A stretch of 63,879 bases of DNA, counting the filler, from Octopus bimaculoides (Eukaryota): NCBI RefSeq assembly GCF_001194135.2. It is 6 parts of 5 records of this genome, joined end to end, with 100 filler letters (N's around TTAATTAATTAA, not from the genome) between each part and the next. Parts side by side here need not be neighbours in the genome. Positions count along the whole stretch, not along the records: positions 49,074 to 61,447 come from NC_068982.1; 5 more parts are not named here. One strand, 5' to 3'. Position 1 is the first letter of the stretch, and each line of letters opens with the position of its first letter. This document shows positions 48,721-61,547 of this stretch, one piece after another. The notes under the pieces were generated by a model that was not told where the DNA came from, made no database searches, and saw nothing but the letters and a program-made list of their open reading frames with translations. The translations under genes and the position numbers were made by a program.

Positions 48721-50459
48721 TTCTCTTATCTTAAATTGGTCCTCCGCAACATCCTCTCCTCCACACCACACACACATACACGCTCACACACATACACATA
48801 TACACACACACATTTATTTCCTACACAAATAATCATATCCTTTATTTTTTCCTTTTCTTCTATCATATCGTATTTGCTGCTCCCCTTTCCTTCTTCCTTT
48901 CTTTCTTTCTCCCTTTTCTTCTGTCTATCTCTGTTACTATTTAATCCCACCTCTCTCTCTCTCTCTCTCTCTCNNNNNNNNNNNNNNNNNNNNNNNNNNN
49001 NNNNNNNNNNNNNNNNNTTAATTAATTAANNNNNNNNNNNNNNNNNNNNNNNNNNNNNNNNNNNNNNNNNNNNCTTTTGTTTTGGGTAACCATCAATTTT
49101 ACCAGGGGACAACTGAAAAATTGTTGCACTACAGTATAGAGACGAGCGTGGCCTAAAGATTAGGGAGTTGCTCATACGATCGCAAGAACGTGGTTTCCAT
49201 CCCCGGACCGCAAGTTGTGTCTATTTAACTAAAGAAACTATTCTTTCGAATAACGAACAATTTTCTAGCGCACAGCTGAAAGACTCTTGCTGCTGCACTG
49301 CAGTAGGTGAAGGCGCATGGCAATGTGGTTAAGGTATTGCACTCACGACTGCAAGATCGTCGTTTGGATTCCCGGACCGAGTGGTGCGTTGTGTTCTTGA
49401 GCAAAACACTTTATTTCACGTTGCTTCAGTCCACTCAGCTGTAAATGAGTAACTCTGTGACAGATCGGCGTCCTGTTCAAAAGAAATGTTCTGATCTCGG
49501 CCACTTATACGCCATGGAAACCGGGTAACCGGCCCAATGAGTTGTAGCACTCAAAATAGTAATGTTCAGGAGACTTGCTACGACTGCAGCAAATATTCCA
49601 CAACAGACAAGAAAGAAGGGGGAAAGGCTTTTAAAAACATCTCTTAAAGTAACTGGTCTTCCACTTCGTTCTCTGGAAGAGATCAAACAGGTCATTGTCT
49701 GAAGGTTCTATCACCTAAGATAACAGCCATTGAAACGCCAGCTGTTAAATACATATGCACAATATCATTTTTTAGAGTGTTAGGCGCTGCAAATACACTG
49801 CAGCCCAGACAAATAAGTTCAAGGACAGTTTTTATTTTCCCACACATCTATTAGACAGCTGAATACAGATATCTAGTGGTGATGTTACTAATATATGTAT
49901 AAGGATGTTTGCATGTGTCGATGTAATTCGTGTTATTGTAATGATATATAATTGCATCGTATGCATTTGATGCATTACTTACTGTCCCTGCATTGTCATT
50001 GTGCTATAATGTGTCACGATACTCAAAAAAAAAAAAAAAAANNNNNNNNNNNNNNNNNNNNNNNNNNNNNNNNNNNNNNNNNNNNNNNNNNNNNNNNNNN
50101 NNNNNNNNNNNNNNNNNNNNNNNNNNNNNNNNNNNNNNNNNNNNNNNNNNNNNNNNNNNNNNNNNNNNNNNNNNNNNNNNNNNNNNNNNNNNNNNNNNNN
50201 NNNNNNNNNNNNNNNNNNNNNNNNNNNNNNNNNNNNNNNNNNNNNNNACACCGATTCCATTACTGAACTAATACTTATTTCCTCGACTCCGAAAGGATAA
50301 AAGGCAAATTCGACCCCGGCGGCTAAGTTGCGGGAACACAAACAAACTGACACGTGTCCTTTCGGGGTCGATGAAATAAGTATCAGTTGAGTACTGGGGT
50401 CGATGTAATCGACTATCCCCCACCCCCAAATTTCGGGCCCTGTGCTTATAGTAGAAAAG

Positions 50460-50522
<63 letters not shown>

Positions 50523-51966
50523 TCTAAGGCGGCGCGCGGGCAGATTCGTCAGCACGCCGGACGAAATGCTTAGCGGCATTTCGTCCGTCTATACATTCTG
50601 CGTTCAGATTTCGCCGAGGTCAACTTTGCCTTTCATCCTCTCGGAATCGATAAAATAAATACCAGTACAGCACCGGGATCGATGTAATCGTCTTACCCAC
50701 TCTCCTGAAACTGCCGGCCTTGTACCAAAATTTGAAACCAATATCAATATGATCGAAAAGGCAGCAGGCTGGTAGAATCATTTGCACGCCGGCAAATGCT
50801 TAGCGGCGTTACGCCCGTCTTTGCGTTCTAAGTTCAAATTCTGCCGAAAGGATTATCATTATTTTCGCTGCTGTTACTTTGTTTTATAGAGCAGTTGCAA
50901 GTCTCACTCTTTCTCTCTCTCTCTCCCTCTCTCTCTCCACTTGCTCTCTCCTCTCTCTCGCCCTTCTCTTGCCCCCTCTCTTTCTCTCTCACACACACAC
51001 ACGTGCGATGGGCATGCACCCAGTTTATGTTCACCAAATTCCCTCACAAGGCATTCGTTGACCTCTGGGTGAGAGTGGGTGAAAGTAATCTTGGCCTACA
51101 TTGCAAATTTCCCTTGAAAGCCTCGTTAATGTTGGTTGTTTTACTCTAAGTATTATTTATGATTTGTAATGAGAACAGAATCTGAGAACTAGGATTCTGT
51201 TAAATTTGTAATATCTTCGATTCTGAAAGAGTATTAAGTGAGTCAGATATTCTCAGGTTGACAGTATTTTTCTTAGGATGTTTGCAATACTCACGAGAAG
51301 AATTTTTTTGTTGCTTTGATACTTTTAGTTTTCCTAGTATTTGGCTGTAGTGTTTAAGAGCGCCATTTGATATTGTCAGATCATGTGATTTCCACATTCC
51401 TTGGCCTTTTCAATGGTAGACGTCCGGTTAGACAGCAGTCAAATTCCCAAGTCAGTGATATATAGAATCTTAGTTTCTATTCAGGCACTGGTGTCGCAAA
51501 TAACCAGTGGGCTTATTAAAAAATAGCTATCAGCGACAGAAGCAGTATTAATACTAAAAGAATATATTTTGTCTCCCACCAGGGCGGCGAGCTGGCAAAA
51601 TGCTTTGCAGCATTTCGTCCGTCGCTACTTTCTAAGTACAAATTCGGCCGAGGTAGACTTTGCCTTTCATCCTTTCGGGGTTGATAAAGTAAGGACCAAT
51701 TGAGCACTGGGGTCGATGTAATCGGCTAACTCTCTCCACTGAAATTGCTGGCCTTGTGCCAAAATTTGAAATCAATGTTTATCTCCCACTAAAAGTGGAT
51801 GTTGTGTTAGAACACAGAATACTGCGTTATTTACCTTGAGTGAATCTCTCATATGGAAATGTGGAAGTTTTGAGCTTATGAATTATTAAAAAAAAAAAAA
51901 AGAATATGATGATAAATTGTACTAAACTGAACTGAATTGAATTTCAGAGTACCAACTTCTACTAAG

Positions 51967-52443: not shown

Positions 52444-52519
<76 letters not shown>

Positions 52520-53822
52520 ATACATTTAATATATCAAATTAAACTTACAACATAATTATCACTGTAAAGTTCATGGGCTGATTATGAAGGAGTGATGCTA
52601 GAGTTATGAAATCTTACGTGCATTAATTCCAACCCTTTTTATTAATAACATTGTTTCTTGAGGTAAACTGACATCTGACTGGTTAAAGAAAACTTCAAAA
52701 TTAACTGGTCTCTTAAAAATGGACAAAATTTGGCTTCGTGGTGGTATTAAGTACTTGCAAAAACAAAAAGAATGCGTTTAGTCCTCAAGGACGTTCATGC
52801 TGACATCGTTGCTATATTAAGAGATGACGCACCAGCTTTAGCAACTGTACAAAAGTGGACAGCTGAATTTAGGAGAGGAAGGGAGAGTCTTGAAGATGAT
52901 CAAGGTCTAGACATCCTGTAACTACCACCGCCAAGGAAAACATTGACCGTGTTCACCGCATAGTAATGGATGACAGGCGACTGACTATAAATCGAATAGT
53001 CAATGCAATTAGCATATCCCATGAATGAGTTGAGAATATTCTGCACAATGAACTTGGTATGACGAAAGTTTCTGCTCGGTGGGTGCCACGTCTTCTGACT
53101 TCTGAGCAAAAGTGCACCAGGATAATCACATCACGGGAAAATCAGGCATTGTTTGGAGCAGATCCAGCTGGTTTTCTTGAAAGTTCCCTAAGCCAGGATG
53201 AGTGTTGGCTTCATCACTTTGAGCGAGAGACAAGGAGACAATCTATGCAGTGGAAACACCCCTCCTCACCGACTCCAATGAAGACCAAGATCGTTTCATC
53301 TACTGGGAGGGTGATGGCCTCAGTTGTTTGGGGGTGAGGATGCAAAAGGCATTGTATTTATTGACTATCTTCAAAAGGGCCACAACATCAATGGAAAGTA
53401 CTATGCCAACTTGCTGAGGCAGTTATGAAAGGTTATCAAGACCAACTGTCCAGGAAAATTGACAAAAGGGGTCTTGTTTCATCAGGACAATGCTCCAACA
53501 CGTAAGTCCTTGGTTTCAGTATCTGCTGTGCGTGACTGTGATTTTGAATTGGTCAATCACCCTCCCTATTCTCCCGATTTGGCCTCATCTGACTATCGTC
53601 TGTTCCCCAACATGAAAAAAACATTTATCTGGAAACCAGTGTCGCAGTGATGATGACATCATATCTGTTGTTGATGAATTTTTTCACGAACAGCATGAAA
53701 GCCGCTTCAGCAATGGGATCCAAGCACGGCAACACTGATGGGAGAAGTGAGTGGACTAAAAGATGGGACTATGTTGAAAAATTAACTTCATACCATGAGA
53801 GTGAACTTTTCAGCCGACCCCT

Positions 53823-53908
<86 letters not shown>

Positions 53909-54565: not shown

Positions 54566-56135
54566 ACACATGCACGCACACACGCACGCTCGCACTCACG
54601 AATACAAAATGCTCATAACATAATGAGATAATATTTATATTTTGTCTTTATTCCCCCGAGGTCGGATTTGCCTTTCATCCTTCATGGTCGATGAAAATAA
54701 GTACCAGCTGAGTACTGGGGACGATGTAATCGATTTACTTCCTCCCCTAATAATGCTGTCCTTGTACCAAAATTTGAAACCAGCATCCACTCTATCTTGC
54801 GATGAAATATTATTTTACAGTTGAACTAAATATGTTAGAAGTATATTAATATGATATGAATATTAAATACGTTTCTCCCCCACCCACAACCATGAAGGCG
54901 CATGGCTCAGTGATTAGAACGTCGAGTTTACGATCGCGTGGTTGTGAGTTCGAATCCCGGACGGGCTGTGTGTTGTGTTCTCGAACAAGTCACTTTATTT
55001 CACGTTGCTCCAGTTCACTCAGCTGTAGAAATGAGTTGCGATGTTACAGGTGCCAAGCTGTATCGGCCCCTTTTTGCCTTTCCTTTGGATAACACAGGTG
55101 GCATGGAGAGGGGAGACCGGTATGCATGGGCGACTGCTGGTCTTCCATAAACAACCTTGCCCGGACTTGTGCCTCGGAGGGTGACTTTCTAGGTGCAATC
55201 CCATGGTCAGCCATGACCGAAAGAGGGTCTCAGCAGTCTCTCACCCCCCCAAATATTGAACATTTTGCTAAAACGTAATAGGTACTGTGTATATAATTTA
55301 TAAGTTTACTACACTTTTATAGTTATCAACGTGTCAAATAAATAAGGCGCAGTGTTGAGAGAATCGTTAGCACGCCGGGCAAAATGCTTAGCAGCACTTC
55401 GACAGTCTTTACGTTCGGAGTTCAGATTACAGAGAGGTCCACTTTTTGCCTTTCGTCCTTTCAGGGTCGATAAAATAAGTACTATTTGAGCACTGGGGTC
55501 GATGCAACCGATTTACCCATCTCCTAAAATTGCTGGCCTTGTGTCAAAATTTGAAAACAATAAATTGCTTCTATGACCTTTACTGAAATAGAAAGATTTT
55601 AAAGGCTTTGATGAATATAAACTAAGTAAGTAATTAGTTAGAATTTATGGGCTGGAGTTGAGTTCCAAAGAAAACATGCACGAGGCTGACACAAAGAAAA
55701 CAGCACGAAGCTGCCACAACTAAATTATATGTTCTATGGTGTGAGACATTGTCTTAAACTGATTCTATGCACATCTTGTTTTTGACAGATGCATGTTATT
55801 TTGTGGTTGACTATCTTCGAGAATATAATATTCCTGTTCCGGAAAGAATACAAAGAATTGATGGTAAATTCCAGAATAGAGAAAGATTATATAATGGTAA
55901 ATTTCTTTCTTTCTTTCTTTTTTAATATTGTACGTTTATAAGGTAAGTCACTGGTGAATCTCAACCTGTGGAATTTGCTGGTACCTTGCTTGATTTCGGC
56001 GCTTGGTCTATTTCTTCAGAGGGAAAAGCTGTAAGAGTTTTCTGTACGTTCAATAATGTAACGTTTGGACCTTCGCATGGCTTGCTTTAAAATCCTCTTT
56101 TCTTGAACTTTTTATAGAGACAGATCCCAGAGTGG

Positions 56136-56181
<46 letters not shown>

Positions 56182-59100
56182 AAGATGATGGGGGACAAAG
56201 AGACAGAAAGACTGAATAAAGGAAAGTGAAAATTAATAATGGGTGTGTGCTTGAAAGAAAGATAGAGACACAGACAAGGTTTGTTCGCAATTGTTTTTGT
56301 TTCGATGCTGGAAATGAAGCCAGAGATCTGAGTTCTAAACTGAAAAGTGAATCAACAGAAAGATAAACAAGAAATTCCTTTGTTTTTTAAACTTGTGAAA
56401 ATACTATTTGCTTTTTAGGTTGGTAGAATTAGTAGAGACTTGATACAACTTGGATTCTTTGTGTCGTATTGTTCTGGTTTCAAATTTCTGGAATATCGAC
56501 TTGAGATTTTTCTTTCTCGTGGCTCGATATAATAAATATCAATAAATTAATTAGAGCGAATTAATTAGTTATACATTCACCTTAACCTCTCCATTTAACA
56601 CACAAATGATTTCATTATGTAATCTCGACTGAGACTACACTATGTAATCATTTGGTCAGTCTGAAAATTCATAGACAAGCCAAGTGGTTAAGAAGTTCTC
56701 TTCGTAAATGACGAGTTCCCGTGTTCGATGCCACTGCACTACATCTTGGACAAATGTCTTTTATCATAGCTTCGGTTCACCACAAACCTTGTGAGTGAAA
56801 CTGGGTAGACGGAAACTGTATAGAAGCCCATTGAATCAGTTGTACCTTTAATTCAAAGACTGAGCCTTGTAACATGCTGTGTCATACCGAATCTGTCTGA
56901 TGATTATATCAAGGGTACAAGTGTTTGTAGAATAGTCAACTACTTCACATGCTAATGCAAAGTTTTTCATTTGATCGAACAACTGAATATTTATCGTCGA
57001 AATTGACGGAGGTCCATTTCCTTTATATGTGAATGTGTACATGCATACGGGAAATTTGTATGTATGTTTAGCTGTGTTGATATGCGCATGTGCGTTTTGA
57101 AGAACTGTTATTTTCTATGTATTTATGGATAAACATGAAGAACTGTTATTTTTTATGTATTTATGGATAAACATGAAGTTTTTTAATGTTTTAGATACGG
57201 ACGACTCCGATTCAGAAAAGAATTGTCATATGATTATTCTCTTGACCTTCGTTCCTGGAGTAATTTTAAGTTCAGTACCTCTGGTTCCATCTCTGTTATA
57301 TAATGTTGGAAAGCTACTTGGTCGTATGAGTAAGTTATTACAGGTGAGTAAAATTCTATTTCTCAGAGATGCACATTTCCCTGAAAGTTTCTTCGTGGTC
57401 TGTCAGCTTACTTGAAACTGTAATCAACTATCCACGCCACCATCTTAAAAAAAGGAATACTACCCTGCTATAGTCTGTATTCCAGCTTCACTCAGTCAGG
57501 TAGTATATGCACGTCACGTCCTGTATTGAAGACTTATTTCACAATATATTCGAAAGTAATCGTTCTTAGTGACTTTAATACTTATGTTTTCTCCACTCCT
57601 TCCATGCCCACGCTACTATAATAGAAACCGGATATTTTACAATTCCGAACGCTCTGAAACTGTTAATATCATAACCTACTGGCATTTCTGATCGATATAT
57701 ATTCCCCTCGAACACTTTTGATCTTCAAGCTTAGCCTTCATCAAACTATCGTCGTCACTGCACCTATCAAATCGTTTACCCAACGAATTCTGCCCACACC
57801 GAGCCTTATAGCATTTCAAGCAAGCTAACTGGTTAATTTCTCAGCAAACACGAATATCCAATTTAGAATAGAGATTATGTGTTGCTGCTAGTTTCTTCTT
57901 TTATTAATCTACTGTACGATCCTGCTTATTGAAAACTTGTGGCCGGAAATTCTGAGAAACTATTTTATGCTGTTAGTAATCTTTATTGCTGAAGGCTGTA
58001 TTTCTGTAGAGATGTTCTGTGGAGATCATGCTTGAGATATAACTGTTCACTGACAACCTGCCTATATTAGGCTTTTGATCACGTGAGAAATGAAGTTCAG
58101 TTATAGCTGTTAAAGAAACATTCATCAATTACTCTATATTTCCACTTCTTTCAGTAGTGAATTGTAACTTCCTATACACGTATTTAAAAAACGATTTTAC
58201 AGGATTTTTGATAGGATACAAAATCTCCACTGTTCAACCAAAAGATTTGTTTTGTAACAACCAAGTATGCTATAACTCTTTTAGAAAAGAGCAAGTATCT
58301 CAAACCAAATTTTTTGTCTACTACAATATATCTGTCATGTAACTAGATATATTTCTCTTTCTTTTATTGCAGAATTTCTCTCATCCGTTTTTCCAAAATA
58401 GACCTCAAGTTATTTGGAATCTGGAGAAACTACCTATACTGACTAAATACCTAGAGTTTATCGAAATTGAAAACGATCGAATGCTAGTCGAAGAGGTCAT
58501 TGAAACTTTCAAAAAGGAAATTCTTCCAAATATCTCAAAATATCAGAAAGGTAACTTCCAAGTTGAAACTCTAACAATATCAAAAACTGACTCTCTAAAA
58601 TGCCTCTATAATTAAAAATTTGATTTCGACTTATTAAAAAATTAGGGTATTTTCCCAAATCATAATAGAAATACCTTCTTGTGGATGCTCTTCTTGTTCT
58701 CAGTAAAGAATATGGGAGATGCGAGTCGACTGCATACGGAAGCATTTCAAAGATTACTTGAATGTTTGTATGTTGGAGTGAGAACGTTAGAGGCAATGGA
58801 AGCATTTTTCGGGTATCACTGGATACAGAGAATTTTTTAACAAAAATCGAATTCCACTTGAAGAAGAAGCGTGGAAGCAGTGTGTTATAAAAGACAGTAG
58901 CTCCTTGCCTGAAAAAATGTAACTAAGGACTAAGACTAGGGTGAAAAGTGATAGGCGTCTGTTTCAGGAAATGCAGAAGGGTATTCAATGTTCTTTCAAA
59001 AGAGCAACTAAGTCCTGACAGATGAGCATGGTAATGCGTTCTCTTCTGATCGAAATACCTGGCTGGTCTTCAATACCAAAGGTGAGGTGAGACAAGCCAA

Positions 59101-59902
59101 GTTAGTGCACCACACCTGGTCATTAGTTCATGCTCCAAAATAGACATAGCACAATATAAGGGTGAAAGCAAGAGGAATCAGTGACATTGATTCGTTATCA
59201 CCTTTGTGACGCAATGCAGCCACCATCAACTACATCTCGAGCATGGCTGAAAATTTCAACTCGTTTTTTCAGGACCAGAAGCCGACTGAACCGAACGTCT
59301 CTGCAAGATAGTTAGGTTCCTCAACTGGTCCTTGGAGTCCTTCTCTATCACAGAATGCCATCTATGCCATGTATATTTATATTTAATTTCTTTTGTTTTA
59401 ATATTCTGTACCATGTGTACTTGCATTTAATTTTGACCTTGATTTTTTTGTACTCCAAAGTACCCAGATACTTGTAGCCATCCACTTCAACATCCTTAAT
59501 TCTCTCGCTGTATATAGAACAGCCATATTAATGAGGCGAGAAGCATTACTTTTCAGTATAGTTACTACTTTCATCTCTTATAGAGATTTTGTAACTAACT
59601 GCTTTGCTTGTTGCAAGATCAGTGACTGATTGTCGCTTGATTTTCTATATATTGTCACCTGGAACAAATTCTTGCTGTCTCTAGCGGCCGAGTGTTCACC
59701 ACTGACGATAGGCACAGATAGCCTGAAACTGTTCGGTCTGGTGATCCCGTCGTATGCTAGAAGACGGTAGGTGTTCGCTCCCCTGCTTGCAATATATACC
59801 AGGTGCAGATTGCATCGATAACCAGCCGGATGAGGCTCTTCCTGGGGTGAAAAACGGTGTAACGCCGAACAGCCGTATTGATGTGGCGATAAACATTACT
59901 TC

Positions 59903-59945
<43 letters not shown>

Positions 59946-60552
59946 TGGAATTGTGTGTTACTCAACGATTTAATCCCAGCATTGGTCTGTATTTCATTTC
60001 AATCGGACAATTTTTCACATTTATAACGTTGCAGGTCATACCCATGGTGACTACAGTCATATGAATATCATAGTTAGAAAGAAACATGAGGAAGTCGAGT
60101 CACTGCATTGCAACGAAAAACTTTGTTCGGTGAACATTAATGATACGGCTGGAAAAATACCTTCGTCACCGTACGGCGTGTCTGGTATTATCGATTTTGG
60201 TCACACAAGATACTCGTACATAGTTCATGATGTTGCAATTTCTATTGCTTACATCTCACTGGAGAGCAAAATCATTGATTCATTAGATGTTGGTGGTCAC
60301 ATTTTAGCTGGTTACTTTTCGGAGATCAAATTGAATTCAGAGGAACTTGACGCTTTACCTGTTTTGATATGTGGTCGCCTTGCTAAGTCATTGACTATTG
60401 GAAGGTACGTATATCAACAAGATACTACAAACTTGTATCCACTGAGAACTTCTGCTCAAGGTTGGCCATTGATTCGTAAAATCTGGAAGACACCAAAAGA
60501 AGTCCTTTTGAAGAGATGGAATGAGATTATAAGCTCATATGGTGAAAATTAA
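51967..60552 (+). CDS. HYKK: Hydroxylysine kinase-like (aminoglycoside-phosphotransferase fold), 5 coding exons, 1194 nt, 397 aa
   Basis: Exons 51967-52207, 55789-55896, 57195-57343, 58373-58550, 60035-60552 join in frame through GT-AG introns. Motifs [56 protein letters not shown] and GW match HYKK/AGPHD1 in order (from memory of the family). Confidence 0.92.
52565..53826 (+). mobile_element. Mariner (Tc1/mariner) transposon fossil in HYKK intron 1
   Basis: [22 protein letters not shown] and [13 protein letters not shown] motifs with stops and frameshifts; right end gtgaacttttcagccgacccctcata followed by TA; left end partly lost. Confidence 0.9.
53925..54320 (+). mobile_element. SINE family A copy in HYKK intron 1
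   Basis: Same consensus; inner (TATC)n; (ATAAAAGA)n tail. Confidence 0.85.
54895..55235 (+). mobile_element. tRNA-derived SINE family C (related copies at 28545-28850 + and 49315-49545 +)
   Basis: ggcgcatggctcagtg..tagaacgtcg...gagttcgaatcccgg...cactttatttcacgttgctccagt.cactcagctgta. Confidence 0.8.
55789..55896 (+). CDS. HYKK: HYKK-like coding exon 2
   Basis: tttgacag|ATGCATGT...TATAATG|gtaaat; [27 protein letters not shown]. Confidence 0.88.
57195..57343 (+). CDS. HYKK: HYKK-like coding exon 3
   Basis: gttttag|ATACGG...TTACAG|gtgagt; [11 protein letters not shown]...[11 protein letters not shown]. Confidence 0.9.
58373..58550 (+). CDS. HYKK: HYKK-like coding exon 4
   Basis: ttttattgcag|AATTTC...CAGAAAG|gtaact; NFSHP...[14 protein letters not shown]. 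Confidence 0.9.
59696..59744 (+). ncRNA. Type I hammerhead ribozyme with complete core, sense in HYKK intron 4
   Basis: TCACCA CTGACGA T AGGC acagata GCCT GAAAC tgttcg GTC^ TGGTGA: helix I 6 bp, helix II 4 bp, short helix III, GUC triplet; helix I extends to 59675-59767. Confidence 0.85.
60035..60552 (+). CDS. HYKK: HYKK-like coding exon 5 (catalytic loop, DFG, stop)
   Basis: gttgcag|GTCATACCCATGGTGAC; [10 protein letters not shown]...GIIDFGH...TAA. Confidence 0.92.
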
Positions 60553-60761
60553 CGAGAATATATGAAGTAAAATGAAAAGGAACGATTGGATATATAGCTT
60601 TTGTTCTCGCGTTTTTTATATACGTCTAACACAGAATTACACGTATGTAAAGGTTCACTTGCATATACCTACCTACCTACCTACCTACCAACCTACCTAC
60701 CTACCTACCTACCTACCTACCTACCTACCTACATACATACATACATACACACATACATACA

Positions 60762-60792
<31 letters not shown>

Positions 60793-61547
60793 GTAGCAGG
60801 AATATTTAGCGATCGAATTTGGATTACTATTTCCGATGAAAAAAAAAAACACACATTAAAACCTAAAAAAACCTCAGCTAAAGAATACGATTGCAATTCG
60901 CGAAGATGATACCAACGTCATAAAAAAATCTGATAATTCAAGTCTTCGTGTGGATCGGGATGTAACAACAATTTCATCTTCGGCGCATATTTTTTTTTTT
61001 TGCCTACACCACCACTATATATTAAGCATATTTTAGCTACTAACAGAGGAGAATACACGCAGACAGCAGACGGTTATCATCAGACAATATCAGAACCAGC
61101 AGCTGTCCTGAGCGCTGTCGCAACACAAAATCAATGGACGGCGGCAACAGCACCACACAATGATCAGCTAACATCAAGAAACTCTCGACAGCGGTTATTA
61201 TCATACCTAGTCCAAGAACAATTAGTTTCAAACTATCTTGATGTTTGTCGTTCGTAGTAACGACAAAAATTTTGCTTGCAATAAAAATAAATATTCTTTT
61301 ATCAAAAATTTTAAACAAGTTTCTTTGTTTATCGTCACGCTCACATACATACACGTACGTACACACATACATACATACATACATACATATGTATATAATG
61401 ATTTGTGATAGAAAAGAGAAACTGTGTACAGTTATGGGAGTTTGCTGNNNNNNNNNNNNNNNNNNNNNNNNNNNNNNNNNNNNNNNNNNNNTTAATTAAT
61501 TAANNNNNNNNNNNNNNNNNNNNNNNNNNNNNNNNNNNNNNNNNNNN

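What the first reader, a model, noticed from the sequence alone, without database searches (positions are those of the whole stretch)
59675..59767. Apparently intact hammerhead ribozyme, sense-oriented in the last intron of HYKK
Seen: the core (CUGACGA, GAAAC, GUC^ at 59738) and helices I (TCACCA/TGGTGA), II (AGGC/GCCT) and III are all present, with one extra U between A9 and helix II. Helix I extends through internal loops (CTAGC/GCTAG, CTGTCT/AGACGG). The site is 296 nt upstream of the exon 5 acceptor, on the transcribed strand. Established: extended helix I/loop II contacts mark fast natural type I HHRs, and intronic HHRs occur in animals. Inference: the HYKK pre-mRNA may self-cleave here, competing with splicing or releasing a defined intronic RNA.
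Basis: partly seen in the sequence, partly recalled or inferred. Interest (0 to 1): 0.8.

Follow-up and report, generated by a model that had tools for sequence, protein, structure and literature searches.

The report
Transposon-borne hammerhead ribozyme motif in intron
The sequence really does contain a hammerhead self-cleaving-ribozyme motif of the classic animal type, but it looks like the cargo of an old 350-bp mobile element that landed in this intron, not a device of the host gene, so it is a fairly ordinary new example of a known kind.

Summary
The motif is present exactly as described, on the + strand at 59696-59744. All core bases are there: CUGACGA, GAAA, and GUC with cleavage after C59738. 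Helix I has 6 bp, helix II 4 bp and helix III 3 bp. A descriptor scan found no other site in the 12.4-kb piece and only 1 relaxed hit in 400 Mb of random sequence.

The unpaired positions resemble the Schistosoma Sm1/N79 hammerhead (GU.. and UCC.. flanking the 6-bp helix I; loop 2 CA(G)AUA). A covariance model built from that ribozyme picks this site as top hit (14.3 bits, rough E 0.03).

It is not fully canonical. It has a U between A9 and 10.1, A10.1-U11.1 instead of G-C, and no Rfam hammerhead hit even at E<=10.

The motif caps a long hairpin inside a 350-bp unit (59517-59866). A 35-nt repeat of the unit's start follows (30/35 identical) and abuts (TG)21. This fits a solitary, old, retrozyme-like or Penelope-like insertion.

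A single cleavage site 296 nt from the acceptor, with no conservation data, gives no support for regulation of the host gene. Activity is untested. No related sequences could be retrieved.

The parts
59517..59901 (+). Whole inserted element: a 350-bp unit (59517-59866) plus a 35-nt repeat of its own start
   Evidence: Searches show the direct repeat. One search gives a fold z-score of -4.5 for 59517-59901. One search gives GC 45% against 39% for the piece.
59517..59551 (+). Direct repeat, copy 1 (GAACAGCCATATTAATGAGGCGAGAAGCATTACTT)
   Evidence: 30/35 identical to 59867-59901; local score 45 against a shuffle maximum of 29.
59867..59901 (+). Direct repeat, copy 2. It is either a terminal redundancy ('tail') or a long target-site duplication, and it lies 4 nt before (TG)21.
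59646..59799 (+). Long imperfect hairpin with the hammerhead at its tip (a rod-like fold)
   Evidence: the MFE and the hammerhead-constrained folds of 59640-59800 share the same outer stem.
59689..59695 (+). CGA stem (pairs with UCG 59750-52), then the 5' side of the helix I internal loop, GUGU (59692-95)
   Evidence: The N79 ribozyme has GUAC at the same place (PMC12550524).
59696..59701 (+). Helix I, 5' strand, UCACCA (positions 2.6-2.1)
59702..59708 (+). Core C3 U4 G5 A6 C7 G8 A9
59709..59709 (+). Extra unpaired U between A9 and 10.1
   Evidence: Infernal treats it as an insertion. An unpaired base here is conserved in Penelope-element hammerheads and occurs in some canonical ones (PMC4209133; PMC1636495).
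59710..59724 (+). Helix II, AGGC/GCCU (A10.1-U11.1), with loop 2 ACAGAUA (59714-20)
   Evidence: Loop 2 matches CAAAUA of Sm1/N79 at 5 of 6 positions, plus one extra A.
59725..59727 (+). Core G12 A13 A14
59728..59737 (+). Helix III, ACU/GGU (A15.1-U16.1, C-G, U.G), capped by GUUC
   Evidence: Two base pairs plus a tetraloop is described as typical of invertebrate type-I hammerheads (PMC7229834).
59738..59738 (+). C17; predicted cleavage between 59738 and 59739
   Evidence: Cleavage itself is inferred, not shown.
59739..59749 (+). Helix I, 3' strand, UGGUGA (59739-44), then the 3' side of the internal loop, UCCCG (59745-49)
   Evidence: N79 has UCCA at the same place.
59906..59947 (+). (TG)21 microsatellite flanking the element
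   Evidence: Penelope-like elements show an insertion bias for microsatellites (PMC8557442).
60035..60552 (+). Downstream terminal coding exon. The AG acceptor is at 60033-34 and the stop codon at 60550-52. It has an APH-type kinase C-terminus.
   Evidence: Pfam APH, E 0.0011, below cutoff; homoserine kinase 2ppq, E 0.07.

Best explanation
The segment 59517-59901 is a solitary, old insertion of a small non-autonomous retroelement of the hammerhead-bearing kind. It resembles the metazoan non-LTR retrozymes, Schistosoma Sm-alpha, and derivatives of the Penelope-like-element flanking repeat (pLTR). It carries one type-I hammerhead of canonical animal architecture, and it happens to lie in sense orientation in the last intron of an APH-family kinase gene.

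In the parent element, tandem copies would be transcribed and cut after C17 by the ribozyme. The ~350-nt monomers would be ligated into highly self-paired circular RNA and copied back into DNA.

At this locus there is only one ribozyme, so at most a single cut of the pre-mRNA intron at 59738/59739 can occur. That cut would give a 2',3'-cyclic phosphate end and a 5'-OH end.

The catalytic core is complete. However, the U bulge after A9, the A10.1-U11.1 pair, the 3-bp helix III and a competing local fold make weak or no monomeric activity about as likely as good activity.

No host function is implied.

Shown: the motif, its non-random nature, its resemblance to Sm1/N79, the repeat structure and the strand. 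Inferred: the mobile-element origin, the family assignment, and any cleavage.
For: - Motif and helices are present.
- It is the only descriptor hit in the piece, against 1 relaxed and 0 strict hits in 400 Mb of random sequence.
- A covariance model built from N79 plus the crystallised Schistosoma hammerhead ranks 59689-59752(+) first, over the full model length: 14.3 bits, rough E 0.034, next hit 6.8 bits.
- Features not in the descriptor match Sm1/N79 (sequence from PMC12550524): helix I of exactly 6 bp, helix II of 4 bp, GU.. and UCC.. in the internal loop, and CA(A/G)AUA in loop 2. The rough joint chance of these is about 1e-6.
- An unpaired base between 9 and 10.1 is a conserved trait of Penelope-element hammerheads and occurs in some canonical ones (PMC4209133). 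In CChMVd an extra A there only moderately lowers the rate (PMC1636495).
- A 35-nt direct repeat with 350-bp spacing lies next to (TG)21.
- Penelope-like elements often carry a 30-40-bp tail and favour microsatellites (PMC8557442).
- Unit size, a 2-bp-plus-tetraloop helix III and strong self-pairing fit invertebrate retrozymes (PMC7229834; fold z -4.5).
- Penelope elements are abundant in coleoid cephalopods.
- The intron also holds other transposon debris.
- The two repeat copies differ at 5/35 positions, so the insertion is old. At that divergence an intact 13-base core is expected about a third of the time without any selection (inference).
Against: - No second copy of the unit or of the ribozyme exists in the 12.4-kb piece, so repetitiveness in the genome is not shown.
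- No RT or GIY-YIG remnant lies within 2.3 kb upstream.
- No Rfam hammerhead hit appears even at E<=10.
- My own model gives only 14 bits.
- G10.1-C11.1, which is highly conserved in both canonical and Penelope-type hammerheads, is A-U here.
- The architecture is canonical, not the 'minimal' form typical of Penelope elements, so the family assignment is a hybrid.
- The 35-nt repeat could be a long target-site duplication instead of a terminal redundancy.
- No relatives were found in any searchable collection.
Confidence: 0.65

Rival explanations
1. One reading: an active, fast intronic hammerhead that cuts the host pre-mRNA co-transcriptionally and thereby regulates last-intron splicing or yields a defined intronic RNA. 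This would be an exapted ribozyme like the amniote RECK/CTCL hammerheads or the CPEB3 ribozyme.
For: - The motif is in sense orientation and the core is complete.
- The 6-bp helix I plus internal loop and the 4-bp helix II resemble the Sm1 tertiary-contact design.
- Domesticated intronic hammerheads exist in amniotes (PMC6155905).
- The CPEB3 ribozyme modulates its host mRNA (PMC10919898).
- An N79 cassette in a long Drosophila intron knocks down the spliced RNA (PMC12550524).
Against: - Only one cleavage site exists, so no RNA can be excised.
- The site is 296 nt from the acceptor, which leaves seconds before the 3' splice site is made. The CPEB3 ribozyme sits 9.9 kb upstream, matching its 2-3 min half-life.
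- Introns cut by slower hammerheads splice normally (exon tethering; PMC2995048).
- N79 in a ~500-bp intron gave no knockdown in mammalian cells.
- The insertion hallmarks and 14% divergence between the flanking repeats suggest neutral decay.
- The bulged U, the A-U at 10.1-11.1 and a competing fold 5.4 kcal/mol more stable argue against a fast ribozyme.
- No conservation data are available.
Confidence: 0.06
2. A chance hammerhead-like motif in a self-complementary transposon hairpin, with no hammerhead ancestry and no activity.
For: - No Rfam hammerhead match at gathering score or at E<=10.
- My own model scores only 14.3 bits with a rough E-value.
- There is a core-adjacent insertion and a non-consensus 10.1-11.1 pair.
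- Long hairpins that supply a 'helix I' for free are common in repeats.
- A whole genome of several Gb is expected to hold a few chance descriptor hits (extrapolated).
- Exact 22-24-base hammerhead-like patterns do occur by chance in bacterial genes.
Against: - About 6e-5 descriptor hits are expected for this piece.
- The unpaired loop positions, which the descriptor does not use, match Sm1/N79 at 10 of 13 compared positions.
- Helix lengths are exactly the canonical 6/4/2-3 bp.
- The 'defect' (a base between 9 and 10.1) is itself a known natural hammerhead trait.
Confidence: 0.07
3. A fragment related to a flavivirus-like 3' stem-loop (the CACAG-loop replication element), that is, an endogenous viral element instead of a ribozyme.
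For: The only Rfam signals over the motif are Flavi_NKV_CRE (15.9 bits, E 1.6), Flavi_CRE (14.3 bits, E 2.7) and Flavi_TBFV_CRE (14.1 bits, E 5.3). They are driven by AGGCACAGAUAGCCUGAAA and the flanking CACCA/UGGUG stem.
Against: - The scores are far below the gathering thresholds (42-60.5 bits) and the E-values exceed 1, even for a 121-nt search.
- The three models are related, so they are not independent evidence.
- No viral protein domain appears in any frame of 57400-59960.
- No match was found in the viral contig collection.
- The hammerhead reading explains more of the sequence (CUGANGA, GAAA, GUC, helix III).
Confidence: 0.01

Closest known systems
Schistosoma mansoni Sm-alpha / Sm1 hammerhead (and its engineered derivative N79)
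   Same: - Type-I topology.
- Helix I of 6 bp followed by an asymmetric internal loop (5' GU.., 3' UCC..).
- Helix II of 4 bp.
- Loop 2 ending CA(A/G)AUA.
- GAAAC ... GUC.
- Carried by a ~335-350-bp non-autonomous retroelement.
   Different: - U inserted after A9.
- A10.1-U11.1 instead of G-C.
- One extra A and an A-to-G change in loop 2.
- GUGU/UCCCG instead of GUAC/UCCA in the internal loop.
- Helix sequences differ throughout.
- Activity is untested.
Metazoan non-LTR retrozymes (Cervera & de la Pena 2020, PMC7229834)
   Same: - Canonical type-I hammerhead with a 2-bp-plus-tetraloop helix III.
- Unit of about 350 bp.
- Highly self-paired RNA.
- Found in molluscs among many phyla.
   Different: - Retrozymes are defined by tandem arrays (dimers to multimers). 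Here there are only 1.1 units with one ribozyme.
- GC of 45% is at the upper edge of the reported range.
- Copy number and circular RNA are unknown.
Penelope-like element pLTR hammerheads (Cervera & de la Pena 2014, PMC4209133)
   Same: [quoted passage not shown]
- Mostly found as single dispersed motifs from truncated elements.
- 30-40-bp terminal extension and microsatellite targets are typical of these elements (PMC8557442).
- Penelope elements are abundant in coleoid cephalopods.
   Different: - Penelope hammerheads are 'minimal': helix II of 6-8 bp, short helix I, little or no helix III, no loop-loop contacts, and a conserved G10.1-C11.1.
- Here the architecture is canonical.
- No RT/GIY-YIG reading frame is nearby.
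Amniote intronic hammerheads HH9/HH10 (RECK, CTCL, DTNB) and the intronic CPEB3 ribozyme
   Same: A sense-strand self-cleaving motif inside an intron of a protein-coding gene. The amniote hammerheads are also Sm-alpha-like type-I motifs thought to derive from retroelements.
   Different: - Those are conserved across whole vertebrate classes. No conservation is known here.
- This locus still carries the insertion hallmarks of the mobile element.
- The site is much closer to the acceptor than in CPEB3 (296 nt against 9.9 kb).

Membership tests
Hammerhead ribozyme, type I | Invariant core: C3 U4 G5 A6 N7 G8 A9, G12 A13 A14, A15.1-U16.1, H17 | tested here: met
   CUGACGA 59702-08, GAA 59725-27, A59728-U59737, C59738.
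Hammerhead ribozyme, type I | Three helices around the core, with helix I open and helices II and III closed by loops | tested here: met
   Helix I 6 bp, helix II 4 bp, helix III 3 bp. The hammerhead-constrained fold is -28.9 kcal/mol against an MFE of -34.3 kcal/mol.
Hammerhead ribozyme, type I | A9 directly followed by the G10.1-C11.1 pair | tested here: not met
   U59709 is inserted and the pair is A59710-U59724. Natural exceptions to the first point are documented. G10.1-C11.1 is 'quasi-conserved'.
Hammerhead ribozyme, type I | Loop 2 / helix I internal-loop nucleotides that make the tertiary contact | tested here: inconclusive
   10 of 13 compared unpaired positions match Sm1/N79. Which contacts survive cannot be judged from sequence.
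Hammerhead ribozyme, type I | Match to the curated covariance models (Rfam Hammerhead_1 and clan) | tested here: not met
   No hammerhead family listed at gathering score or at E<=10 on 601 nt and 121 nt. My own Sm1-based model gives 14.3 bits, rough E 0.034, top hit.
Hammerhead ribozyme, type I | Mg2+-dependent self-cleavage 3' of position 17 | not testable with these tools
   Needs in vitro transcription and a cleavage assay.
Metazoan non-LTR retrozyme | Tandem repeats (at least a dimer) of a 150-450-bp unit, each with a type-I hammerhead | tested here: not met
   One 350-bp unit plus 35 nt of a second; one hammerhead; no other copy in the piece.
Metazoan non-LTR retrozyme | Unit RNA highly self-paired; low GC | tested here: met
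   Fold z -4.5. GC is 45%, at the edge of the reported <45% (PMC7229834).
Metazoan non-LTR retrozyme | Many genomic copies; expressed as circular RNA | not testable with these tools
   No genome or transcriptome of the source organism is reachable.
Penelope-like element (pLTR) | Adjacent reading frame with RT and GIY-YIG endonuclease | tested here: not met
   Six-frame Pfam scan of 57400-59960 gave no family at E<=1. No long ORFs.
Penelope-like element (pLTR) | Hammerhead with an unpaired base at the 5' end of helix II | tested here: met
   U59709 (PMC4209133).
Penelope-like element (pLTR) | Minimal hammerhead architecture (long helix II, short helix I, no helix III or loop contacts) | tested here: not met
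   The architecture is canonical 6/4/3 bp.
Penelope-like element (pLTR) | 30-40-bp terminal extension; insertion at a microsatellite | tested here: inconclusive
   A 35-nt repeat lies at the element end, 4 nt from (TG)21. It could equally be a long target-site duplication.
Domesticated intronic hammerhead (HH9/HH10-like) | Conservation at the orthologous intron position across species | not testable with these tools
   No orthologous loci were retrievable.
Flavivirus 3' CRE (Rfam RF00185, RF03538, RF03540) | Score at or above the family gathering threshold | tested here: not met
   14.1-15.9 bits against thresholds of 42-60.5; E 1.6-5.3.

The most novel reading that the evidence does not exclude
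The hammerhead has been exapted. On this reading it is conserved in the last intron of the orthologous gene across coleoid cephalopods, and it self-cleaves fast enough to compete with terminal-intron splicing and 3'-end formation. It would be an invertebrate counterpart of the amniote RECK/CTCL hammerheads and the CPEB3 ribozyme.

A milder novel reading is also open. The motif may document a cephalopod retrozyme family whose ribozyme combines canonical architecture with the Penelope-type bulge. That would be a link in the proposed descent of animal retrozymes from Penelope-like elements (bioRxiv 10.64898/2026.07.22.740005).
Probability: 0.04. Interest if true: 0.65.

Novelty: new member of a known kind. 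Interest (0 to 1): 0.25.

Why it matters
If the reading is right, this adds a cephalopod locus to the long list of animal genomes carrying retroelement-borne type-I hammerheads. In the searchable literature no paper describes a cephalopod hammerhead. Only 4 papers hold both terms; of the two listed, one (on Penelope-like elements) does not describe one and the other (on twister ribozymes) was not opened.

The locus also shows a ribozyme with canonical Sm-alpha-like architecture plus the unpaired base typical of Penelope-element hammerheads. That bears modestly on the idea that retrozymes descend from Penelope-like elements.

It would matter more only if the motif proved active and conserved in the orthologous intron. 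It would then be a rare invertebrate case of a ribozyme acting on a host pre-mRNA. As it stands it is a useful annotation and a caution: curated covariance models miss natural hammerheads that have a core-adjacent insertion.

Tried and rejected
- Rfam at gathering score and at E<=10 on 12.4 kb, 601 nt and 121 nt gave no hammerhead family. It gave only sub-threshold flavivirus CRE, CRISPR-repeat and low-complexity miRNA hits.
- Orthologous or related loci could not be obtained. The exon 5 peptide found no homolog at E<=1e-10 in the 5.8-billion protein set (the threshold I set was strict, but a cephalopod ortholog would have passed it). The exact-ORF look-up found nothing.
- Collection scans:
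  - The family-specific pattern gave 0 hits in metagenome contigs and 0 in viral contigs.
  - The generic Sm-alpha-like pattern gave 3 hits in metagenome contigs, all chance matches inside bacterial coding sequence with no helices, and 0 hits in viral contigs.
  - The bacterial/archaeal genome scan gave 1 hit, at the 3' end of a Dehalococcoidia ligA gene. It has no helix I or III and is a chance match.
- Penelope RT/endonuclease or viral ORF remnants next to the element: none.
- Further copies of the unit in the piece, on either strand, by sensitive local alignment: none beyond the 35-nt repeat.
- tRNA-like SINE heads: none.
- Plain MAFFT alignment of the motif to N79 misaligned because of the indels. 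I replaced it with a structure-aware model.
- An alternative register that would restore G10.1-C11.1 needs two bulged bases plus an extra U before G12. I rejected it as less parsimonious.

Full report
**Observation**

The + strand at 59675-59767 reads CUGUCUCUAGCGGCCGAGUGU-UCACCA-CUGACGA-U-AGGC-ACAGAUA-GCCU-GAA-ACU-GUUC-GGU-C-UGGUGA-UCCCGUCGUAUGCUAGAAGACGG. In hammerhead numbering:

| Element | Sequence | Coordinates |
|---|---|---|
| Helix I, 5' strand | UCACCA | 59696-701 |
| Helix I, 3' strand | UGGUGA | 59739-744 |
| Core C3-A9 | CUGACGA | 59702-708 |
| Extra U | U | 59709 |
| Helix II | AGGC/GCCU | 59710-13 / 59721-24 |
| Loop 2 | ACAGAUA | 59714-20 |
| G12 A13 A14 | GAA | 59725-27 |
| Helix III | ACU/GGU | 59728-30 / 59735-37 |
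| Loop 3 | GUUC | 59731-34 |
| C17 | C | 59738 |

It extends further to a ~150-nt hairpin spanning 59646-59799. The cleavage site is 296 nt before the AG at 60033-34.

**Is it more than chance?**

I wrote a descriptor requiring CUGANGA, 0-1 extra base, helix II >=4 bp, GAAA, helix III >=2 bp, U16.1, H17 and helix I >=5 bp, with G-U pairs allowed.

- It hits only this site on both strands of the 12.4-kb piece.
- It gave 1 hit in 200 Mb of i.i.d. sequence of the same composition, and none with this candidate's helix lengths.
- It gave 0 hits in 200 Mb of first-order Markov sequence.
- The expectation for the piece is therefore about 6e-5.

Positions the descriptor does not use also resemble a proven ribozyme. 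The N79 cassette, derived from Schistosoma Sm1, is printed in PMC12550524. It reads GCAG-GUAC-AUCCAG-CUGAUGA-GUCC-CAAAUA-GGAC-GAA-AC...GU-C-CUGGAU-UCCA-CUGC. The window has CGA-GUGU-UCACCA-CUGACGA-u-AGGC-aCAGAUA-GCCU-GAA-ACU..GGU-C-UGGUGA-UCCCG-UCG.

- Both have a 6-bp helix I and a 4-bp helix II.
- Both internal-loop strands start the same way (5' GU.., 3' UCC..).
- Both have a loop 2 ending CA(A/G)AUA.

Given the base composition, the joint chance of those three loop matches is roughly 1e-6. This is a post hoc estimate.

**Covariance models**

Rfam gives no hammerhead hit at gathering score. It also gives none at E<=10 when only 601 nt or 121 nt are searched.

To see whether the miss reflects the insertion or the absence of a hammerhead, I built a model from two sequences. 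One was N79. The other was the two strands of the crystallised Schistosoma hammerhead. I recalled the second from memory. Its lengths (43 + 20 nt) and all shared positions agree with N79.

With filters off, the top hit in the piece is 59689-59752(+). It aligns over the full model length at 14.3 bits, E 0.034 (rough calibration). The next hit scores 6.8 bits. Infernal places U59709 and A59714 as insertions and aligns the loops as above. The motif is therefore recognisably Sm1-like but diverged. A score this low, even against its closest relative, explains the Rfam miss.

**Deviations from consensus**

- **Extra base after A9.** The literature shows an unpaired base at this spot is not fatal. 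[quoted passage not shown] In the CChMVd (+) hammerhead an extra A there causes only a moderate rate decrease (PMC1636495).
- **A10.1-U11.1.** This replaces the quasi-invariant G-C pair.
- **Short helix III.** It has 3 bp including a terminal U.G. Two base pairs plus a tetraloop is described as typical of invertebrate type-I hammerheads (PMC7229834).
- **Competing fold.** GACGAUAG pairs with CUGUU..GUC in a local fold 5.4 kcal/mol more stable than the hammerhead fold in the nearest-neighbour model (-34.3 against -28.9 kcal/mol). Tertiary contacts are not modelled.

My estimate that the isolated RNA shows detectable self-cleavage is about 0.45.

**Context**

- A 35-nt direct repeat sits at 59517-51 and 59867-901. 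It is 30/35 identical, with local score 45 against a shuffle maximum of 29.
- The repeat defines a 350-bp unit followed by a repeat of the unit's own first 35 nt. The second copy ends 4 nt before a (TG)21 microsatellite.
- The unit plus its terminal repeat (59517-59901) folds far better than shuffles (z -4.5). The unit has 45% GC against 39% for the piece.
- There is no other copy of the unit in the piece on either strand.
- There are no ORFs of note, and no Pfam domain in any frame of 57400-59960.

Several published features match:

- Animal type-I hammerheads live mainly in ~150-450-bp non-LTR retrozyme repeats whose RNAs are highly self-paired circles (PMC7229834).
- They also occur in the flanking repeats of Penelope-like elements, where most motifs are single and dispersed (PMC4209133).
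- Penelope insertions often carry a 30-40-bp terminal extension and favour microsatellites (PMC8557442).
- Penelope elements are abundant in coleoid cephalopods.

Whether the 35-nt repeat is a terminal redundancy or a long target-site duplication, it marks the segment as an insertion. The 14% divergence between the two copies indicates an old insertion. At that divergence per pair (about 8% per copy), a 13-base core stays untouched about one time in three with no selection (inference). An intact core is therefore not evidence of function.

**Host gene and consequences**

The downstream ORF on the + strand (60035-60552, stop at 60550-52) carries an HGD...N / IDFG kinase motif. It hits Pfam APH weakly (E 0.0011, below cutoff) and homoserine kinase 2ppq weakly. 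This is consistent with the C-terminal exon of an APH-family kinase such as HYKK, so the sense orientation is credible. The gene name and the cephalopod origin could not be verified.

Several points argue against an effect on the host transcript:

- With one ribozyme there can be one cut, not an excised RNA.
- Introns cut by a hammerhead were spliced as efficiently as intact ones (exon tethering). Only a fast ribozyme abolished splicing (PMC2995048).
- N79 knocked down RNA from a 17.5-kb Drosophila intron but not from a ~500-bp mammalian one.
- The CPEB3 ribozyme sits 9.9 kb upstream of the next exon, matching its 2-3 min half-life.
- Here only 296 nt separate the site from the acceptor. The ribozyme would need to be very fast to matter, and its deviations argue against that.

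**Comparative data**

None could be obtained. The protein database holds no ortholog of the exon, and the exact ORF is not on record. Pattern scans of metagenome, viral and prokaryotic genome collections returned nothing or chance matches in bacterial genes. Genomic copy number, family consensus and orthologous-intron conservation therefore remain untested.

**Rivals**

| Reading | Confidence | Main point |
|---|---|---|
| Exapted regulatory ribozyme | 0.06 | Not excluded, but unsupported |
| Pure chance motif | 0.07 | Disfavoured by the statistics and the loop matches |
| Flavivirus-like 3' stem-loop | 0.01 | Rests on three related sub-threshold Rfam hits (14-16 bits, E>1), with no viral coding remnant nearby |

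**Verdict**

This is a real hammerhead-lineage motif of canonical animal type I. It most likely arrived on a solitary, old, retrozyme-like or Penelope-related insertion. Its activity is uncertain, and there is no evidence of a host role. It is a new member of a known kind, of modest interest.

Noticed in passing
window 59673-59758 (+): The only Rfam signals over the motif are sub-threshold matches to three flavivirus 3' replication-element models (14.1-15.9 bits, E 1.6-5.3). AGGCACAGAUAGCCUGAAA resembles the CACAG-loop hairpin of the flaviviral 3' stem-loop. I judged it coincidental.
   Followed up: partly
window ~52840-53640 (+): A decayed mariner/Tc1-type transposase with frameshifts and stops. 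It matches Pfam Transposase_1 (E 1.3e-7) and HTH_Tnp_Tc3_2 (E 7e-4). A (CA)n run lies on either side, at 52445-52524 and 53832-53905.
   Followed up: partly
window 50356-50847, 51598-51776, 54606-54784, 55343-55562; inverted pair 50248-50320 / 51647-51719: Several copies (61-80% identical) of a ~100-180-bp interspersed repeat, in both orientations. It is probably a SINE-like family. No tRNA-like head was detected.
   Followed up: no
window 49308-49443 and 54893-55027: Another two-copy repeat. A 60-nt core is 88% identical and a 24-nt stretch upstream is 83% identical, with spacing of about 5.58 kb (families D9 and D10).
   Followed up: no
window 50042-50247: A run of 206 N inside the piece, following an A17 run. 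It looks like an assembly gap within the intron.
   Followed up: no
window 57098-57193: A 38-bp unit repeated 2.5 times in tandem; the first two copies are 97% identical.
   Followed up: no
window 60666-60788 and 61343-61389: (TACC)n/(TACA)n microsatellites lie downstream of the stop codon. They produce sub-threshold mir-297 and mir-4012 Rfam hits, which are low-complexity artefacts.
   Followed up: no
L004 83-110 (-), Dehalococcoidia MAG contig CAIMUM010000223.1: An exact match to a 24-base hammerhead-like pattern (CTGAAGA-C-AGGC-TCAAATA-GCCT-GAAAC) straddles the stop codon of a ligA-like gene. It has no helix I or III. The random expectation was about 0.01, so the match is an odd coincidence, possibly a small terminator-like hairpin.
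   Followed up: partly
window 59654-59662 and 59800-59806: CACCUGG and CCAGGUG are perfectly complementary. They offer an alternative outer pairing to the one in the MFE fold, so the rod around the ribozyme may have more than one register.
   Followed up: no
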